IMG/VR virus record: IMGVR_UViG_3300032288_004964
Location: 1 to 64,000 of that record
DNA length: 64,000 bases
Strand: one strand, 5' to 3'
Both the position numbers and the translations under genes were made by a program. The notes below the pieces were generated by a model that was not told the origin of the DNA, searched no databases, and saw nothing but the letters and a program-made list of their open reading frames with translations. Positions 40,085 to 44,013 of the stretch are shown here, piece by piece (the stretch's first letter is position 1; the number at the start of each line of letters is the position of its first letter).

Positions 40085-41176
40085 ATGAATATTAAATTAG
40101 AGTATATTTGGCTTGATGGTTCTAACCCTCAGCAAATTAGGAGTAAGACAAAGATTGTAAATAAGATGGATACAATGATTCCTATGGACTATCCTGTTTG
40201 GTCTTTTGATGGTAGTTCTACTGGACAAGCTCAGTCTGGTAAAGGTAAAAACACAGATTGTCTATTAAAGCCGGTATTTGTTACTATGGATCCATTTAGA
40301 GGTAATCCACATAGATTAGTTTTATGTGAAGTTCTTAACCCAGATGGTACACCACATGAATCAAATAACAGAAGAAAATTAGCTAAAAAAGTATCTGAAT
40401 TAAATATTGATTCAAATGAGAAATCTGATCTTCCTTGGTTTGGTTGGGAACAAGAATATACACTAACACATAAACCTATGGTTCCATTTGGTGTAGGTGA
40501 AGGTATTCCTTTAGGATTTAGTTTAGATCCAAATAGAGTACCAAGACCACAAGGTGATTATTATTGTGGTATCGGTTCTGATAATGTAGTAGGTAGAGAA
40601 ATTGTTGAAGAACATATGGACTTATGTATGGAAATTGGATTAGATATTTCAGGTATTAATGCTGAAGTTTTACTAGGTCAGTGGGAATATCAAATTGGTC
40701 CAGTTACTGCTCTAAACGGTTCAGACCAGTTATGGATATCAAGATATCTATTACAAAGAGTTGCTGAAAAACATAATGTTAAAGTTTCTTTACATCCAAA
40801 ACCATTAAAAGGAGATTGGAATGGAACTGGTTGTCACGTTAACTTTTCTACTAAAGAAATGAGAGAAGAAGGTGGAATAGAAATCATTAAGGAAAGTATG
40901 GTGAAGCTAGAAAGATATCAAAAAGAACATATTGCTGTTTATGGTTTACATAATAATGAGAGATTAACTGGAGCACATGAAACTTCAAGTATTAATGAGT
41001 TTAGTTATGGATTCTCTACAAGAGATACTTCTATTAGAATCCCAGCTCAAGCAATTGTTGAAGGTAAAGGTTATTTTGAAGATAGAAGACCAGCTTCTAA
41101 CTGTGACCCTTATTTAGTTTCTGAGAGAATGTTACAAACAGTTTATTCTGAAGTTGAAGTTTCAGCAGAAGCATAA
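40085..41176 (+). CDS. glnII: Glutamine synthetase type II
   Basis: EYIWLDG, RSKTK, WSFDGSSTGQA, GWEQEY, NAEV..GQWEYQIGP, HPKP..GDWNGTGCH, RLTG.HET, YFEDRRPASNCDPY. Confidence 0.95.
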   Translation: MNIKLEYIWLDGSNPQQIRSKTKIVNKMDTMIPMDYPVWSFDGSSTGQAQSGKGKNTDCLLKPVFVTMDPFRGNPHRLVLCEVLNPDGTPHESNNRRKLAKKVSELNIDSNEKSDLPWFGWEQEYTLTHKPMVPFGVGEGIPLGFSLDPNRVPRPQGDYYCGIGSDNVVGREIVEEHMDLCMEIGLDISGINAEVLLGQWEYQIGPVTALNGSDQLWISRYLLQRVAEKHNVKVSLHPKPLKGDWNGTGCHVNFSTKEMREEGGIEIIKESMVKLERYQKEHIAVYGLHNNERLTGAHETSSINEFSYGFSTRDTSIRIPAQAIVEGKGYFEDRRPASNCDPYLVSERMLQTVYSEVEVSAEA

Positions 41177-41194
41177 CATAAATGATTATAAAGT

Positions 41195-41223
41195 AAAAAT
41201 CCACTCAATTGAGTGGATTTTTT
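41195..41223. terminator. Bidirectional terminator
   Basis: AAAAATCCACTC-aatt-GAGTGGATTTTT. Confidence 0.85.
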
Positions 41224-41369
41224 ATTTTAAAGATATTTTGAATTTTTTCTTTTCTCCTTTTCTGTCTAGATGGAAATATAGTCATAGATGCCATTCCAAA
41301 TCCTGGATCTAAAACAATATCAAATGTTTTTATATTAATATTAGAGTGAGTGGAGTCCCATTCCGTCAT
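41205..41369 (-). CDS. Small 54-aa protein missing from the ORF track (MTEWDSTH...RRKEKIQNIFKIKNPLN)
   Basis: Fills the gap, overlaps the end of the gp55-like gene, and carries an RxxK(I/L)xxI motif. Confidence 0.5.
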   Translation of the reverse strand: MTEWDSTHSNINIKTFDIVLDPGFGMASMTIFPSRQKRRKEKIQNIFKIKNPLN

Positions 41370-41706
41370 TTGATCCTTCAATTGAAATTAATTTAATTAA
41401 GTGTTCATTATCGCCTTTCTTTTTATAGAGTTCATTATAACCTTTAGCGATTCCTCTTTTGAATACTTCTGTAAAATATGCGAAAGCATTTACAGATTTT
41501 TCTTCATTGAAATTATACCAGTTTTGAAACATATCAAGTAGTCCTGACTGATAACAATCTAATTTGTCATCATTTGACCAGTATCTCATTTTCTTGATTG
41601 TTTTTTTCGCTAATAATTCTAACATTTTTTCAGCGTTTCTTGTTAATTTTCCTTGTGCTTTTGACACTATGACCTCAATATAGAGATCTTTATTATTTAA
41701 ATAGAT
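41341..41706 (-). CDS. Late-transcription sigma factor (T4 gp55-like); start uncertain
   Basis: In-frame YLNNKDLY upstream of GTG 41667 (cf. gp55 YVNNKEL); NF...KS.NAFAYFT motif. No in-frame ATG precedes YLNNK. Confidence 0.75.
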   Translation of the reverse strand: MYLNNKDLYIEVIVSKAQGKLTRNAEKMLELLAKKTIKKMRYWSNDDKLDCYQSGLLDMFQNWYNFNEEKSVNAFAYFTEVFKRGIAKGYNELYKKKGDNEHLIKLISIEGSNDGMGLHSL

Positions 41707-41795
41707 AAGCGTTGGATTATTTTTTGAGTAAAAAAATTTTCATTTTTTGCTTTCATGTTATATAAACATGTAACATGAAAGTTTAATTTTAAAAT

Positions 41796-41826
41796 AAAAA
41801 ATCCTCAAATTTCTTTGAGGATTTTT
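41796..41826 (-). terminator. Intrinsic terminator
   Basis: AAAAATCCTCAAA...TTTGAGGATTTTT. Confidence 0.8.
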
Positions 41827-41841
41827 ATTATATTATAATAA

Positions 41842-43125
41842 TTAAAGTTTAATTCTTTCTTTGTATTGTAATTCTTTAGTAGCTTGTAGTTCAACATCTA
41901 AGTTTTCTCTTCTCTTTTCTAAGTTTTTAAGAGCTGTTGTTAGAACTTCTGACTCACCAATCATTTGAATAGAACCTTTTACTTTTTCAATGTTAAAATT
42001 AACATCTTCAAGTTTTAAAGTGATTTCTCTTTCTTTATCTTCTAATTTTCTTTTAACTATTAATTCTTTGTCTAATTTATTTTCAAAGAAATAAGTTAAG
42101 TCATAGTTTAATTCATTTCTAACTTCATTTACTAATTCTAAAGCTGATTCATATTTAAAGAATGAATTACCATATCTTTCATCACATCTGTAAACAAAAG
42201 TATTATTTTTGTAGTTGAATGCAAATACTTCTAAGTAAGGATTGATTAGATTGTTAACTTTTTTAACAACATCTAATTCAATGAATTTATCTAAACTTTT
42301 AGACACTTCAAGTAAAACAGGGTAGAAGTTTTTATTAACAATTGGAACAATTGGTGAAGAGAATAAACTTTCTAAAGTTGTTTCTTCATTCATCTCATCA
42401 TCATTGATATAGATAGAACCTTTTTTACTAACTGGTAATCCAATAGTTAAATATTCAGAAATTCTGAAATTAACTCTATCTTCAGTAACAGTAGCATATT
42501 TCATAGCTGTTTCTAACATTCTTAAAGATTTTAAATCTTCTTCATTTTTAACATGATTTTCTAAAAGAGTTTTCTCAATATTAGACTCAGTTAAAATAAA
42601 CCAAGAATCTTTTACTAAAGCAATATGACCTTCTTCAACTTGTTCAACAACTGTGAAAATAGATTCACCTTTACCACCACTTAAAAGATTTGTTTTCTTC
42701 TCAGGTGATTTAGTTAAGTTATGTACGAATAATTTAACTTCAGGTACCCAATCATAGATAGCTAATTCGTTAAGAATCTTAGACATTCTATCTTGATCAC
42801 TTTCAAGATTAATAGTCTGTAAAACAACATTAATTGGTTGTCTATAAAGTTCTCCTTGATTTTTAGTATTCAAAACATTATATAAATTTTTTAATTCATA
42901 TAATAATTCGTAATTTTTCATATCATCATTAAGATTCTCTAGTAATGATTTAACACTTTTATCGTAAGTATAAGGCTTTAATCTTTCGTTAAGTGAGTTT
43001 ATAATTACTTTTTCTGATAACTCATTACAAGCATTCATGTGTCCTTCAATTACAAATGAAATCTCTTCTTGATCAAGAGAAAGTTCCTTTTTGAAGTTAT
43101 ACAGTTCAAGTTTAAGATTCTTCAT
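41842..43125 (-). CDS. Hypothetical protein, probably late/structural (C-terminal coiled coil)
   Basis: 427 aa; TAATATATA promoter at 43154-43162. Confidence 0.7.
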   Translation of the reverse strand: MKNLKLELYNFKKELSLDQEEISFVIEGHMNACNELSEKVIINSLNERLKPYTYDKSVKSLLENLNDDMKNYELLYELKNLYNVLNTKNQGELYRQPINVVLQTINLESDQDRMSKILNELAIYDWVPEVKLFVHNLTKSPEKKTNLLSGGKGESIFTVVEQVEEGHIALVKDSWFILTESNIEKTLLENHVKNEEDLKSLRMLETAMKYATVTEDRVNFRISEYLTIGLPVSKKGSIYINDDEMNEETTLESLFSSPIVPIVNKNFYPVLLEVSKSLDKFIELDVVKKVNNLINPYLEVFAFNYKNNTFVYRCDERYGNSFFKYESALELVNEVRNELNYDLTYFFENKLDKELIVKRKLEDKEREITLKLEDVNFNIEKVKGSIQMIGESEVLTTALKNLEKRRENLDVELQATKELQYKERIKL

Positions 43126-43188: not shown

Positions 43189-44013
43189 TTAGTTATTTTT
43201 ATTTGGATCTGACGAATTTGGGTTATTTGTTCCTGGATTTGTCTTTTCTCTTGTCTTTAATAGGTTATTATACCATCTTGTCCTCTTTGGTGCTACTATA
43301 TAATTTGGATCATAAACTCCACCTATTTCAGTTAGAGGTCCATTTTCAGATCCATTTACCGATGTTTTATTAGATCCAACTCTATCTCTTCTTAATGCTG
43401 GATAATATGTCTGAACCTCAAATGAAATAGATAATTTAATAGTATTATCACCAGTCATATTCTTTTCTCTATTTATCTCAACAGTATTTTGATCAGGTAG
43501 TAACATCACCGCATCAATATTCATAAAGTTGTGTTCAAACCACATAAATCTATATAACCAAAGAGTATCTAATATAGCTTGACTACATTTGAATATATCA
43601 ATCTCACTAGATAAAATAATAGATAGATCATAACTAACTGTAATTGGAACAGCTCTTACTTTAGATAAAACTTTTCTTATTTCAGTATCATCTTCTAATA
43701 CCATTTTTAACCAAACATTTGGATTGGCAAACTCATCAGACCTAATAGTAAAATTAGTCATTGTTAAATGACCTCTTGGAATTTGATCAGTATTTAATTC
43801 AATAAATCTGTTTTCTGAAACTATATCATCTGCGAATGAGTCTAATAAAAATCTTTCATCCCCTGTTAATGAGTAGTAGAAAGGAACTTTAACATAGACA
43901 TCACCTGAGCTAAATCTATTAACCCAGTTAATTTGACCCTCCATTGTATCTAAAACACAAACAGTTAGATCTCTAAAAAATACGTCTTCGAAATTAAACT
44001 TTTTACCCACCAT
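43189..44013 (-). CDS. Tail sheath stabilizer/terminator (T4 gp15-like)
   Basis: VKVPFYY...ERFL...IPRG...AVP....YDL.I. Confidence 0.75.
   Translation of the reverse strand: MVGKKFNFEDVFFRDLTVCVLDTMEGQINWVNRFSSGDVYVKVPFYYSLTGDERFLLDSFADDIVSENRFIELNTDQIPRGHLTMTNFTIRSDEFANPNVWLKMVLEDDTEIRKVLSKVRAVPITVSYDLSIILSSEIDIFKCSQAILDTLWLYRFMWFEHNFMNIDAVMLLPDQNTVEINREKNMTGDNTIKLSISFEVQTYYPALRRDRVGSNKTSVNGSENGPLTEIGGVYDPNYIVAPKRTRWYNNLLKTREKTNPGTNNPNSSDPNKNN

What the first reader, a model, noticed from the sequence alone, without database searches (positions are those of the whole stretch)
41341..41785. Late sigma factor lacks an in-frame ATG: T7 slippery tract or non-canonical start, under a palindromic promoter
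The conserved-looking YLNNKDLY lies upstream of the called GTG, preceded by ATC (41706). The frame is open to 41739 with no ATG. Two upstream ATGs are out of frame across one T7 run (41736-41730). ATG 41756 (MKAKNENFF) meets U-UUU-UUU in the correct phase for a -1 frameshift into the sigma frame, and ATG 41743 would need +1. An 11-bp perfect inverted repeat (41750-41760/41771-41781) overlaps the putative promoter. Inference: the late switch is throttled by recoding, slippage or ATC initiation. A homopolymer sequencing error is also possible.
Basis: partly seen in the sequence, partly recalled or inferred. Interest (0 to 1): 0.65.

Follow-up and report, generated by a model that had tools for sequence, protein, structure and literature searches.

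The report
Phage late sigma gene starting at ATC
The only gp55-like late sigma gene of this 385-kb freshwater megaphage most likely starts at an ATC codon, because relatives carry ATG, ATT, ATC or TTG at exactly that position; the nearby T7 run is one arm of a leader hairpin, not a frameshift site.

Summary
Contigs from four studies reproduce the ATC and the T7 run without change.

The gene (41341-41706, minus strand) is a true gp55-type sigma: PHROG 234, and best fold match T4 gp55 (TM 0.72). It is the only copy in the genome.

Among 73 distinct alleles from viral contigs, the codon aligned with ATC 41706 is ATG (49), ATT (15), ATC (8) or TTG (1), and nothing else. Coding-type conservation starts immediately after it. 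The triplets before it are non-coding, and some alleles have a TGA two codons upstream.

The frameshift model fails:
- The upstream ATG has a random frame across alleles, and its uORFs are mostly 2-15 codons.
- The T-run varies in length (T5-T8) with indels and forms one arm of a hairpin.
- No stimulatory structure follows it.

A start at GTG 41667 would delete near-invariant Y2, L3 and E11 and most of helix 1.

Best reading: near-cognate AUC initiation in a leader without Shine-Dalgarno, probably giving low sigma output. The reduced output is inferred, not shown.

Unexplained: ATY alleles also carry a reinforced hairpin at +18 to +35 and usually GTG at codon 14, all inside one recombining 5' module.

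The parts
41341..41706 (-). gp55-like late sigma factor CDS, 121 codons, from ATC 41706 to stop TAA 41343-41341
   Evidence: PHROG 234, E 1e-6. The family profile hits T4 gp55 7d7c_F at E 0.005. The AF2 model (pLDDT 79.7) matches 7d7c_F at TM 0.72, rmsd 1.5. All 83 homologous loci are 121 codons when counted from this position. Genome profile hits begin at 41706.
41704..41706 (-). ATC, proposed near-cognate initiation codon
   Evidence: It aligns with ATG in LR756502 and LR745206. In 73 distinct IMG/VR alleles the column is ATG 49, ATT 15, ATC 8, TTG 1. In-frame stops lie 1-18 codons upstream in ATY alleles. It is reproduced in 4 assemblies.
41665..41667 (-). GTG at codon 14, the start that gene callers use (108-aa product); probably not the main start
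   Evidence: A start here would remove Y2, L3 and E11, which are at least 90% conserved, and residues 5-13 of helix 1. Its upstream context scores at the 3rd percentile of true starts and lies in a hairpin. However, GTG occurs here in 26 of 36 ATY alleles against 1 of 49 ATG alleles.
41717..41725 (-). A-rich tract AAAAAATAA, at -19 to -11 from the ATC; conserved in both ATG and ATY alleles
   Evidence: The genome's ORF starts show A enrichment at -20 to -9 and no SD use (12 of 342 against 23 in the control region). This matches the Bacteroidia initiation signal (PMC6847099).
41727..41751 (-). Leader hairpin (AGCAAAAAA / TTTTTTACT; inner stem AAAAAAT-GAAA-ATTTTTT); the T7 run 41730-41736 is its 3' arm
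   Evidence: the repeat finder I8. The fold gives -2.2 kcal/mol, which is weak. A hairpin of variable sequence sits at the same position in nearly all alleles.
41697..41756 (-). Incidental uORF from ATG 41756 (MKAKNENFFTQKIIQRLSI*), out of frame with the sigma gene
   Evidence: In relatives the uORFs from the homologous ATG are mostly 2-15 codons and fall in all three frames.
41750..41762 (-). Conserved non-coding motif TATAACATGAAAG, which is the right arm of the palindrome
   Evidence: Present with at most 1 mismatch in 64 of 85 distinct alleles. It occurs only once in the 385-kb genome. Function unknown.
41749..41782 (-). Palindrome (11 bp perfect, about 15 pairs in all) between the upstream terminator and the leader
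   Evidence: -11 kcal/mol, z -4.5. At least 9 of 11 positions are complementary in 21 of 64 motif-bearing alleles, against about 3% of shuffles.
41671..41688 (-). Hairpin inside the coding region: codons 7-8 (GAT CTC) pair with codons 11-12 (GAG GTC); the stem begins at +18 from the A of AUC
   Evidence: for the fold. ATY alleles have 6 of 6 pairs in 21 of 36 and a mean of -5.9 kcal/mol. ATG alleles have 6 pairs in 1 of 49 and a mean of -1.5.
41797..41826 (-). Intrinsic terminator of the upstream gene (AAAAATCCTCAAAGAAATTTGAGGATTTTT); invariant in close relatives
41195..41222 (.). Bidirectional terminator hairpin downstream of the sigma gene and its small downstream ORF

Best explanation
The gene at 41341-41706 (minus strand) is the phage's single gp55-type late sigma factor. 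It is translated from the near-cognate codon AUC at 41706, presumably read by initiator tRNA as Met. The product is a 121-residue protein whose N-terminus matches that of its ATG-initiated orthologues.

The mRNA has no Shine-Dalgarno sequence. Start selection rests on an unstructured leader with an A-tract at -19 to -11, as in Bacteroidia, the predicted host phylum of the related megaphages.

Because AUU and AUC initiate at a few per cent of AUG in the one system measured (E. coli), the ATC/ATT allele probably sets a lower sigma output than the ATG allele, or one more sensitive to initiation factors. That would tune the timing or strength of late transcription.

Shown here:
- the homology of the codon to relatives' start codons;
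- coding selection beginning right after it;
- the lack of any conserved upstream reading frame;
- the identity of the protein.

Inferred: that AUC is actually used, and that expression is reduced.
For: 1. ATC aligns with ATG in the two nearest megaphages, both of which have in-frame stops just upstream.
2. Among 80 relatives of 91-100% identity the column is ATG 68, ATT 7, ATC 5. Among 73 distinct alleles it is ATG 49, ATT 15, ATC 8, TTG 1, so only initiation-capable codons occur and ATA never does.
3. The 12 ATY loci of the first set were found by whole-protein matching. In them, codons 2-13 show 14 extra synonymous codon types against 3 conservative amino-acid types, the same regime as codons 14-121. 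The six upstream triplets are either invariant at all three positions or change to TGA.
4. ATY alleles have in-frame stops 1-18 codons upstream. Only L064 (GTG) and L206 (ATG) have an in-frame canonical start in unbiased samples.
5. Y2, L3 and E11 are at least 90% conserved down to 37% identity. The model places helix 1 at residues 5-18.
6. YLNNKDLY aligns to T4 gp55 residues 10-17. The segment of gp55 before that is disordered and absent in many homologues (PMC7892883).
7. The upstream context of 41706 scores best among the candidate starts, and the TIR folds at 0 kcal/mol.
8. This is the only gp55-like gene in the genome.
9. ATC is reproduced in four assemblies.
10. Precedents: AUU starts of infC and pcnB, and AUA/AUC/AUU initiating at 1-2% of AUG (bioRxiv 10.1101/063800). 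An ATT start attenuates EbpA (PMC4447247).
Against: - There is no direct evidence of translation: no proteomics, no Ribo-seq and no usable RNA runs.
- GTG at codon 14 is strongly enriched in ATY alleles (26 of 36 against 1 of 49). Two of the unbiased ATY alleles without it have another in-frame canonical start upstream. This hints that a canonical start may matter.
- The context score of 41706 is only at the 25th percentile of true starts, and -3 is C rather than A.
- Initiation efficiency of AUC in Bacteroidia is unknown.
- The host assignment is indirect. It rests on relatives' predicted host, the lack of SD use and a phage bS21 gene.
Confidence: 0.7

Rival explanations
1. Translation starts at GTG 41667 and yields a 108-residue sigma. 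The 13 codons upstream would be untranslated leader that merely looks coding.
For: GTG is the only canonical in-frame start. Gene callers use it (P0120, 108 aa). GTG at this codon occurs in 26 of 36 ATY alleles against 1 of 49 ATG alleles. A GAGG lies 5 nt upstream.
Against: - Codons 2-13 evolve under the same purifying regime as the rest of the gene within the ATY group.
- Y2, L3 and E11 are near-invariant family-wide.
- The truncation would remove 9 of the 14 residues of helix 1 of the sigma-R2 fold.
- Ten of 36 ATY alleles lack GTG here, and seven of those have no other canonical start.
- The GTG context is poor (3rd percentile of true starts) and lies next to a hairpin.
- The genome does not use SD sequences.
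- The GTG-ATY link sits within one recombining 5' module, so it does not represent independent events.
Confidence: 0.1
2. Ribosomes start at ATG 41756 and shift -1 on U UUU UUU. Alternatively, RNA polymerase adds a U in the T7 run. Either route would give MKAKNENFF-YSKNNPTL-IYLNNK...
For: The heptamer is in the right phase. A few database proteins with the Ile allele are in frame with an upstream ATG and read ...FYSKNNP..IYLNNK (P0005, P0012, P0048).
Against: - The frame of the homologous ATG is random: 14/17/14 in ATG alleles and 10/4/5 in ATY alleles.
- uORFs from that ATG are mostly 2-15 codons.
- The closest allele, L102, has T7 but the uORF MKV*.
- In-frame fusions occur in 1 ATY allele found without length bias and in 1 of 49 ATG alleles, which is chance level. 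ATG alleles with fused extensions also exist (P0018, P0027).
- T-run and A-run lengths differ by indels among close alleles (T6/T7, A6/A7).
- L105, L109 and L118 have TGA one to two codons before ATT.
- The FYSKNNP similarity reflects a conserved nucleotide string that also exists out of frame.
- No structure lies 5-9 nt after the run.
- The T-run is a hairpin arm.
Confidence: 0.05
3. The ATC allele is a damaged or decaying copy (a start-codon loss), and the phage makes little or no functional sigma from it.
For: A single G-to-C change from ATG would produce it. Metagenomic contigs can come from defective genomes.
Against: - ATY alleles make up about one third of distinct alleles. They occur in many samples and habitats, on several gene-body backgrounds and with at least eight leader types.
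- They keep intact 121-codon frames, and only synonymous or conservative change is seen.
- This is the only gp55-like gene in a record estimated 95% complete.
Confidence: 0.05
4. The ATC and/or the T7 run is an assembly or homopolymer sequencing error.
For: The record is a metagenome assembly. Homopolymers are error-prone.
Against: Contigs of four runs from four studies agree base for base over 41635-41820. An identical allele is found on other contigs (L008/L107), and related ATC/ATT alleles occur in dozens of contigs.
Confidence: 0.02

Closest known systems
T4 gp55 late sigma factor (PDB 7D7C/7D7D; PHROG 234)
   Same: It has the four-helix sigma-region-2-like domain (TM 0.72, rmsd 1.5 A over 99 columns, 21% identity). 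The N-terminal YxNNKEL motif aligns. It has a conserved, probably disordered C-terminal tail where gp55 carries its clamp-binding motif.
   Different: It is 121 rather than 185 residues. No fifth helix (the helix-loop-helix motif) is modelled. There is no N-terminal disordered segment. No gp45-type clamp was detected by Pfam in the genome. It starts with ATC instead of ATG.
AUU-initiated genes infC and pcnB of E. coli, and the ATT-initiated ebpA of Enterococcus faecalis
   Same: A near-cognate AUN codon sits at the position of the start codon of a dosage-sensitive gene. The expected result is low or factor-sensitive initiation (bioRxiv 10.1101/063800; PMC4447247).
   Different: Here the codon is polymorphic in nature (ATG/ATT/ATC/TTG) within one phage gene family. 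It includes AUC. It sits in an SD-less, A-tract-driven leader. It travels with a reinforced downstream hairpin. No experiment exists for it.
Programmed -1 frameshift sites (X XXY YYZ with a downstream stimulator, for example dnaX and IS elements) and transcriptional slippage on homopolymers
   Same: A U UUU UUU heptamer lies in the correct phase relative to an upstream ATG.
   Different: There is no conserved 0-frame ORF, no conserved run length, and no stimulator at 5-9 nt. The run is part of an inverted repeat.
Bacteroidia SD-independent translation initiation regions (Flavobacterium johnsoniae)
   Same: There is no SD sequence, adenines are enriched around -11 to -14 and further upstream, and the TIR has low structure (PMC6847099).
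   Different: -3 is C rather than A, and the start is not AUG. Whether Bacteroidia ribosomes accept AUC is not known to me.

Membership tests
gp55-type phage late sigma factor | Sequence similarity to the family profile | tested here: met
   PHROG 234, E 1e-6, residues 12-97 of the open frame against profile positions 9-105. The profile of A2 hits gp55 7d7c_F at E 0.005. tblastn hits include annotated late sigma factors of XacN1 and Xoo-sp13.
gp55-type phage late sigma factor | Sigma-region-2-like helical domain (H1-H4) | tested here: met
   The AF2 model has helices at 5-18, 23-37, 45-65 and 74-94. The top Foldseek hit is 7d7c_F (TM 0.72, probability 1.0), followed by sigma R2 domains.
gp55-type phage late sigma factor | Helix-loop-helix extension (long H4 plus H5) that guides template-strand DNA | tested here: inconclusive
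   The model shows no fifth helix, but residues 97-121 have pLDDT below 50. The protein is 64 residues shorter than gp55.
gp55-type phage late sigma factor | C-terminal sliding-clamp-binding motif and a gp45-type clamp partner | tested here: inconclusive
   The conserved C-terminal tail (S108, N113, G115, G117) is predicted to be disordered. Pfam gp45 families PF09116 and PF02916 find nothing in the genome; a divergent clamp cannot be excluded.
gp55-type phage late sigma factor | Directs RNA polymerase to late promoters (TATAAATA type) | not tested
   No promoter survey or expression data were obtained.
Genes initiated at a near-cognate AUU/AUC codon | No canonical in-frame start at or upstream of the conserved N-terminus | tested here: met
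Genes initiated at a near-cognate AUU/AUC codon | The codon is homologous to the canonical start codon of orthologues, and coding constraint begins there | tested here: met
Genes initiated at a near-cognate AUU/AUC codon | The protein N-terminus is fMet/Met encoded at that codon | not testable with these tools
   This needs N-terminal proteomics or Edman sequencing.
Genes initiated at a near-cognate AUU/AUC codon | Lower expression, or IF3-dependent expression, relative to an AUG variant | not testable with these tools
   This needs reporter assays or toeprinting.
Programmed -1 ribosomal frameshift | Slippery heptamer in phase with an upstream ORF | tested here: met
   U UUU UUU at 41736-41730 is in the frame of ATG 41756.
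Programmed -1 ribosomal frameshift | Conserved 0-frame ORF and conserved slippery run in relatives | tested here: not met
   Frames are random, uORFs are mostly 2-15 codons, runs are T5-T8 with indels, and L102 has MKV*.
Programmed -1 ribosomal frameshift | Stimulatory structure 5-9 nt downstream | tested here: not met
   41726-41686 folds at 0 kcal/mol. The first hairpin begins about 41 nt downstream.

The most novel reading that the evidence does not exclude
The ATY allele may be a distinct, selected design of translation initiation region, not merely a weak start.

Its parts would be a near-cognate AUY, a synonymous-codon-reinforced hairpin beginning at +18, and a GUG three nucleotides past that hairpin. 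The +18 position lies about where the leading edge of a ribosome with AUY in its P site would sit.

The hairpin would act as a backstop that parks SD-blind ribosomes on the weak start, or as a switch between a full-length and a truncated product. Phage populations would keep both ATG and ATY modules by recombination, as alternative settings of the late-gene switch. Those settings could respond to ribosome state, since the phage encodes bS21.
Probability: 0.2. Interest if true: 0.75.

Novelty: new member of a known kind. Interest (0 to 1): 0.5.

Why it matters
Confirmed bacterial AUU/AUC starts are very few. Gene callers miss them: here they truncate a sigma factor by 13 conserved residues or fuse it to chance upstream ORFs.

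This case offers a natural allelic series (ATG, TTG, ATT, ATC) at the start codon of the master regulator of late transcription. It occurs in a widespread group of uncultured freshwater megaphages whose hosts probably initiate translation without Shine-Dalgarno pairing.

That makes two questions directly testable:
- How well do Bacteroidia-type ribosomes use near-cognate starts?
- Do phages tune the early-to-late switch at the start codon?

It also corrects the annotation: 121 aa, not 108.

Tried and rejected
- **-1 frameshift or transcriptional slippage at T7:** rejected on comparative grounds.
- **Read-through of TGA 41742:** reading the sequence, the frame would run into TAA 41760-41758 with no ATG in between. 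No alternative genetic code was applied in any tool.
- **Sequencing error:** rejected.
- **Second gp55 copy:** none found.
- **Phage tRNA that could initiate on AUY:** among 37 tRNAs, Ile(GAU) looks like an ordinary elongator, and no initiator-like tRNA with a non-CAU anticodon was seen.
- **Phage IF3 or IF1:** none found.
- **Sigma-70-type promoter at the palindrome:** nothing above chance.
- **TATAACATGAAAG as a repeated promoter motif:** it is unique in the genome.
- **Conserved uORF or termination-reinitiation coupling:** the uORF end near the start is shared by the window and LR745206 but not by other alleles.
- **Single-sequence PDB search:** no hit.
- **gp45 clamp by Pfam:** none found.
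- **Monophyly of ATY on the gene tree:** rejected, with 5 changes needed. This is explained by a recombining 5' module, so the associations of ATY with GTG14 and with the strong hairpin cannot be counted as independent events.
- **Not used:** the large representative protein search and complex prediction, because they were not needed.

Full report
**1. The observation.** On the minus strand the reading frame of the called ORF (GTG 41667 to TAA 41341) stays open upstream to 41739, where TGA 41742-41740 closes it. It contains no ATG, GTG or TTG before 41667. ATC 41706 precedes YLNNKDLY. ATG 41756 and ATG 41743 lie in the other two frames, across a T7 run at 41736-41730. The 11-bp inverted repeat is real and extends to about 15 pairs. 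Logan contigs of four runs from four studies cover 41635-41820 with no difference and no indel. Two of those runs may be the source sample; a groundwater run and a plankton run are independent. This evidence is at contig level, not raw reads.

**2. What the gene is.** The open frame matches PHROG 234, 'late sigma transcription factor' (E 1e-6). A profile of 34 family members finds T4 gp55 as its best solved relative (7d7c_F, E 0.005), and YLNNKDLY aligns to gp55 residues 10-17. An AlphaFold model (pLDDT 79.7; helices at 5-18, 23-37, 45-65, 74-94; disordered tail) has gp55 as its top structural match, with TM 0.72, rmsd 1.5 A and probability 1.0. A series of sigma region-2 domains follows. It is the only such gene in the 385-kb record.

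The nearest database relatives are the uncultured megaphages LR756502 and LR745206, then LR756504, LR756501, LR756500 and the Lak phages. These belong to the Mahaphage clade and are predicted to infect Bacteroidetes (PMC7162821, PMC9723777). The genome has 28.7% GC, does not use Shine-Dalgarno sequences, shows A enrichment at -20 to -9 before ORF starts, and encodes bS21. All of this fits the SD-blind translation of Bacteroidia (PMC6847099).

**3. The start codon.** In LR756502 and LR745206 an ATG sits in exactly the column of the window's ATC, with in-frame stops just upstream. Among the 80 best IMG/VR relatives (91-100% identity) the column is ATG 68, ATT 7, ATC 5. Pattern scans raised this to 73 distinct alleles: ATG 49, ATT 15, ATC 8, TTG 1. 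There is no ATA and no other codon. A metagenome scan added further ATY alleles.

The 12 ATY loci of the first set were found through whole-protein matching, so they are not biased toward N-terminal conservation. In them, codons 2-13 show 14 extra synonymous codon types against 3 conservative amino-acid types, the same regime as the gene body. The triplets upstream are either invariant at all three positions (AAA, AAT, CCA) or change non-synonymously, including to TGA. ATY alleles have in-frame stops 1-18 codons upstream. L105, L109 and L118 have TGA one to two codons before ATT.

Y2, L3 and E11 are at least 90% conserved across the family down to 37% identity. A start at V14 would remove them together with nine of the fourteen residues of helix 1. 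In T4 gp55 the segment before this helix is disordered and missing in many homologues (PMC7892883), which fits orthologues that begin M-Y-L-N-N-K. A weight matrix built from the genome's own ORF starts ranks the context of 41706 above those of GTG 41667, ATG 41756 and ATG 41743. The region from -20 to +20 around the ATC is unstructured.

I conclude that AUC 41706 is the initiation codon, with confidence about 0.7. AUA, AUC and AUU initiate at about 1-2% of AUG in E. coli, where only infC and pcnB are confirmed AUU starts (bioRxiv 10.1101/063800). An ATT start attenuates EbpA in Enterococcus (PMC4447247). By analogy the ATC allele should lower sigma output or make it factor-sensitive. That step is an inference.

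**4. Why not a frameshift.** The ATG at 41756 lies inside a conserved non-coding motif, TATAACATGAAAG. Across alleles its frame relative to the sigma gene is random (14/17/14 in ATG alleles, 10/4/5 in ATY alleles). The uORFs it opens are mostly 2-15 codons. The allele closest to the window (L102, also T7) has MKV*. Close alleles differ by one-base indels in the T-run and in the following A-run (T6A6, T6A7, T7A6), so that stretch is not coding.

Database proteins that fuse an upstream ATG to the Ile allele (P0005, P0012, P0048) made me re-test the idea. Such fusions occur in one ATY allele found without length bias (L206) and in 1 of 49 ATG alleles. ATG alleles with fused extensions exist as well (P0018, P0027). 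The shared 'FYSKNNP' reflects a conserved nucleotide string, TTTTAYTCAAAAAATAATCC, that in most alleles is out of frame or blocked by stops.

The T-run is the 3' arm of an inverted repeat (41727-41735 with 41743-41751). This occupies the position where nearly all alleles have a hairpin of unrelated sequence, ending at the A-tract. Nothing folds within 40 nt downstream of the run.

**5. Mosaic 5' module and unexplained covariation.** On a tree of the 363-nt gene the ATY state needs five changes, at least three of them forced by well-supported branches. Yet the 5' modules (-22 to +45) of ATY loci are each other's nearest neighbours, while their gene bodies are nearest to ATG loci. Examples are L053 with L060 at 97%, L076 with L085 at 96%, and L009 with L012 at 96%. 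The start-codon state therefore travels on a recombining 5' module. Both alleles occur in the same metagenomes, for example 3300043570 and 3300042894.

Two further features ride on this module.
- **GTG at codon 14:** it occurs in 26 of 36 ATY alleles against 1 of 49 ATG alleles. Of the ATY alleles without it, L064, L206 and L229 have another in-frame canonical start upstream, and seven have none.
- **A hairpin between codons 7-8 and 11-12, starting at +18:**
  - In ATY alleles it has 6 of 6 pairs in 21 of 36 and a mean of -5.9 kcal/mol. In ATG alleles it has 6 pairs in 1 of 49 and a mean of -1.5.
  - Formal counts give 85% paired cells in ATY alleles and 72% in ATG alleles, against 24-60% for slid controls. 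One pair in each set exchanges U-A for C-G.
  - The hairpin is thus family-wide, but synonymous codon choice (CTC, GAG, GTC/ATC) strengthens it where the start is weak.

Because all these sites are linked, the associations are not independent events. Whether the hairpin helps place ribosomes on AUY, masks GUG14, or is only hitch-hiking is open.

**6. The palindrome.** Its right arm is the conserved motif, which occurs only once in the genome. At least 9 of 11 positions are complementary in 21 of 64 motif-bearing alleles, against about 3% of shuffles. It is missing in many alleles, and 16 of 36 ATY alleles lack the motif entirely. No sigma-70-type promoter is predicted above chance. It may be an operator or part of a phage-specific promoter, but this is not shown, and it is not linked to the start-codon state.

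**7. Verdict.** This is a new member of a known kind, near-cognate initiation of a regulatory gene. What adds interest is the natural ATG/ATT/ATC/TTG polymorphism in an SD-less context and the co-travelling hairpin.

No alternative genetic code was used.

Noticed in passing
window 41665-41667 and 41671-41688 (minus strand); loci L008-L229: In alleles that start with ATT or ATC, codon 14 is usually GTG (26 of 36 against 1 of 49). The hairpin between codons 7-8 and 11-12 is much more stable (-5.9 against -1.5 kcal/mol). All of these sites lie on one recombining 5' module, so the cause (selection or linkage) is open.
   Followed up: partly
window 41205-41381 (minus strand): A small basic ORF follows the sigma gene and overlaps its last codons (about 54 aa from ATG 41369: ...TFDIVLDPGFGMASMTIFPSRQKRRKEK...). 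It is conserved in relatives (a 56-aa gene in L225) and is fused to the sigma protein in database entry P0031. No family match was found.
   Followed up: partly
window 40085-41176 (plus strand): A phage-encoded glutamine synthetase (Gln-synt_N plus Gln-synt_C, 363 aa) converges on the sigma gene and shares a bidirectional terminator with it (41195-41222).
   Followed up: partly
G000:C1:195499-195651 (outside the window): The phage encodes ribosomal protein bS21 (41.5 bits, above the Pfam cut-off). No IF3 or IF1 was found. In Bacteroidia, bS21 helps hide the anti-Shine-Dalgarno sequence.
   Followed up: no
G000:C1:236363-282921 and 370132-370204 (outside the window): The genome has 37 tRNA genes. 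They include a suppressor-type tRNA with anticodon CTA (it would read TAG) and three tRNA-like genes with four-base anticodons as called by ARAGORN. Whether TAG is recoded in some genes was not examined; the window's long ORFs read normally under table 11.
   Followed up: no
window 41750-41762 (minus strand); L001-L229: The motif TATAACATGAAAG, preceded by AAACTTT about 15 nt upstream, is the best-conserved non-coding element before the sigma gene in most relatives. It occurs only once in the 385-kb genome. It could be a gene-specific promoter or operator.
   Followed up: partly
L018/L025/L047 (sample 3300043570); L117/L029/L050/L077 (sample 3300042894): ATG-type and ATY-type alleles of the sigma gene co-occur in the same metagenomes.
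   Followed up: no
window 43189-44013 (minus strand): This ORF is a weak match to the T4 gp15 tail-sheath stabiliser (21.7 bits, below the cut-off of 25). The 427-aa gene between it and the sigma gene (41842-43125) has no family match.
   Followed up: no
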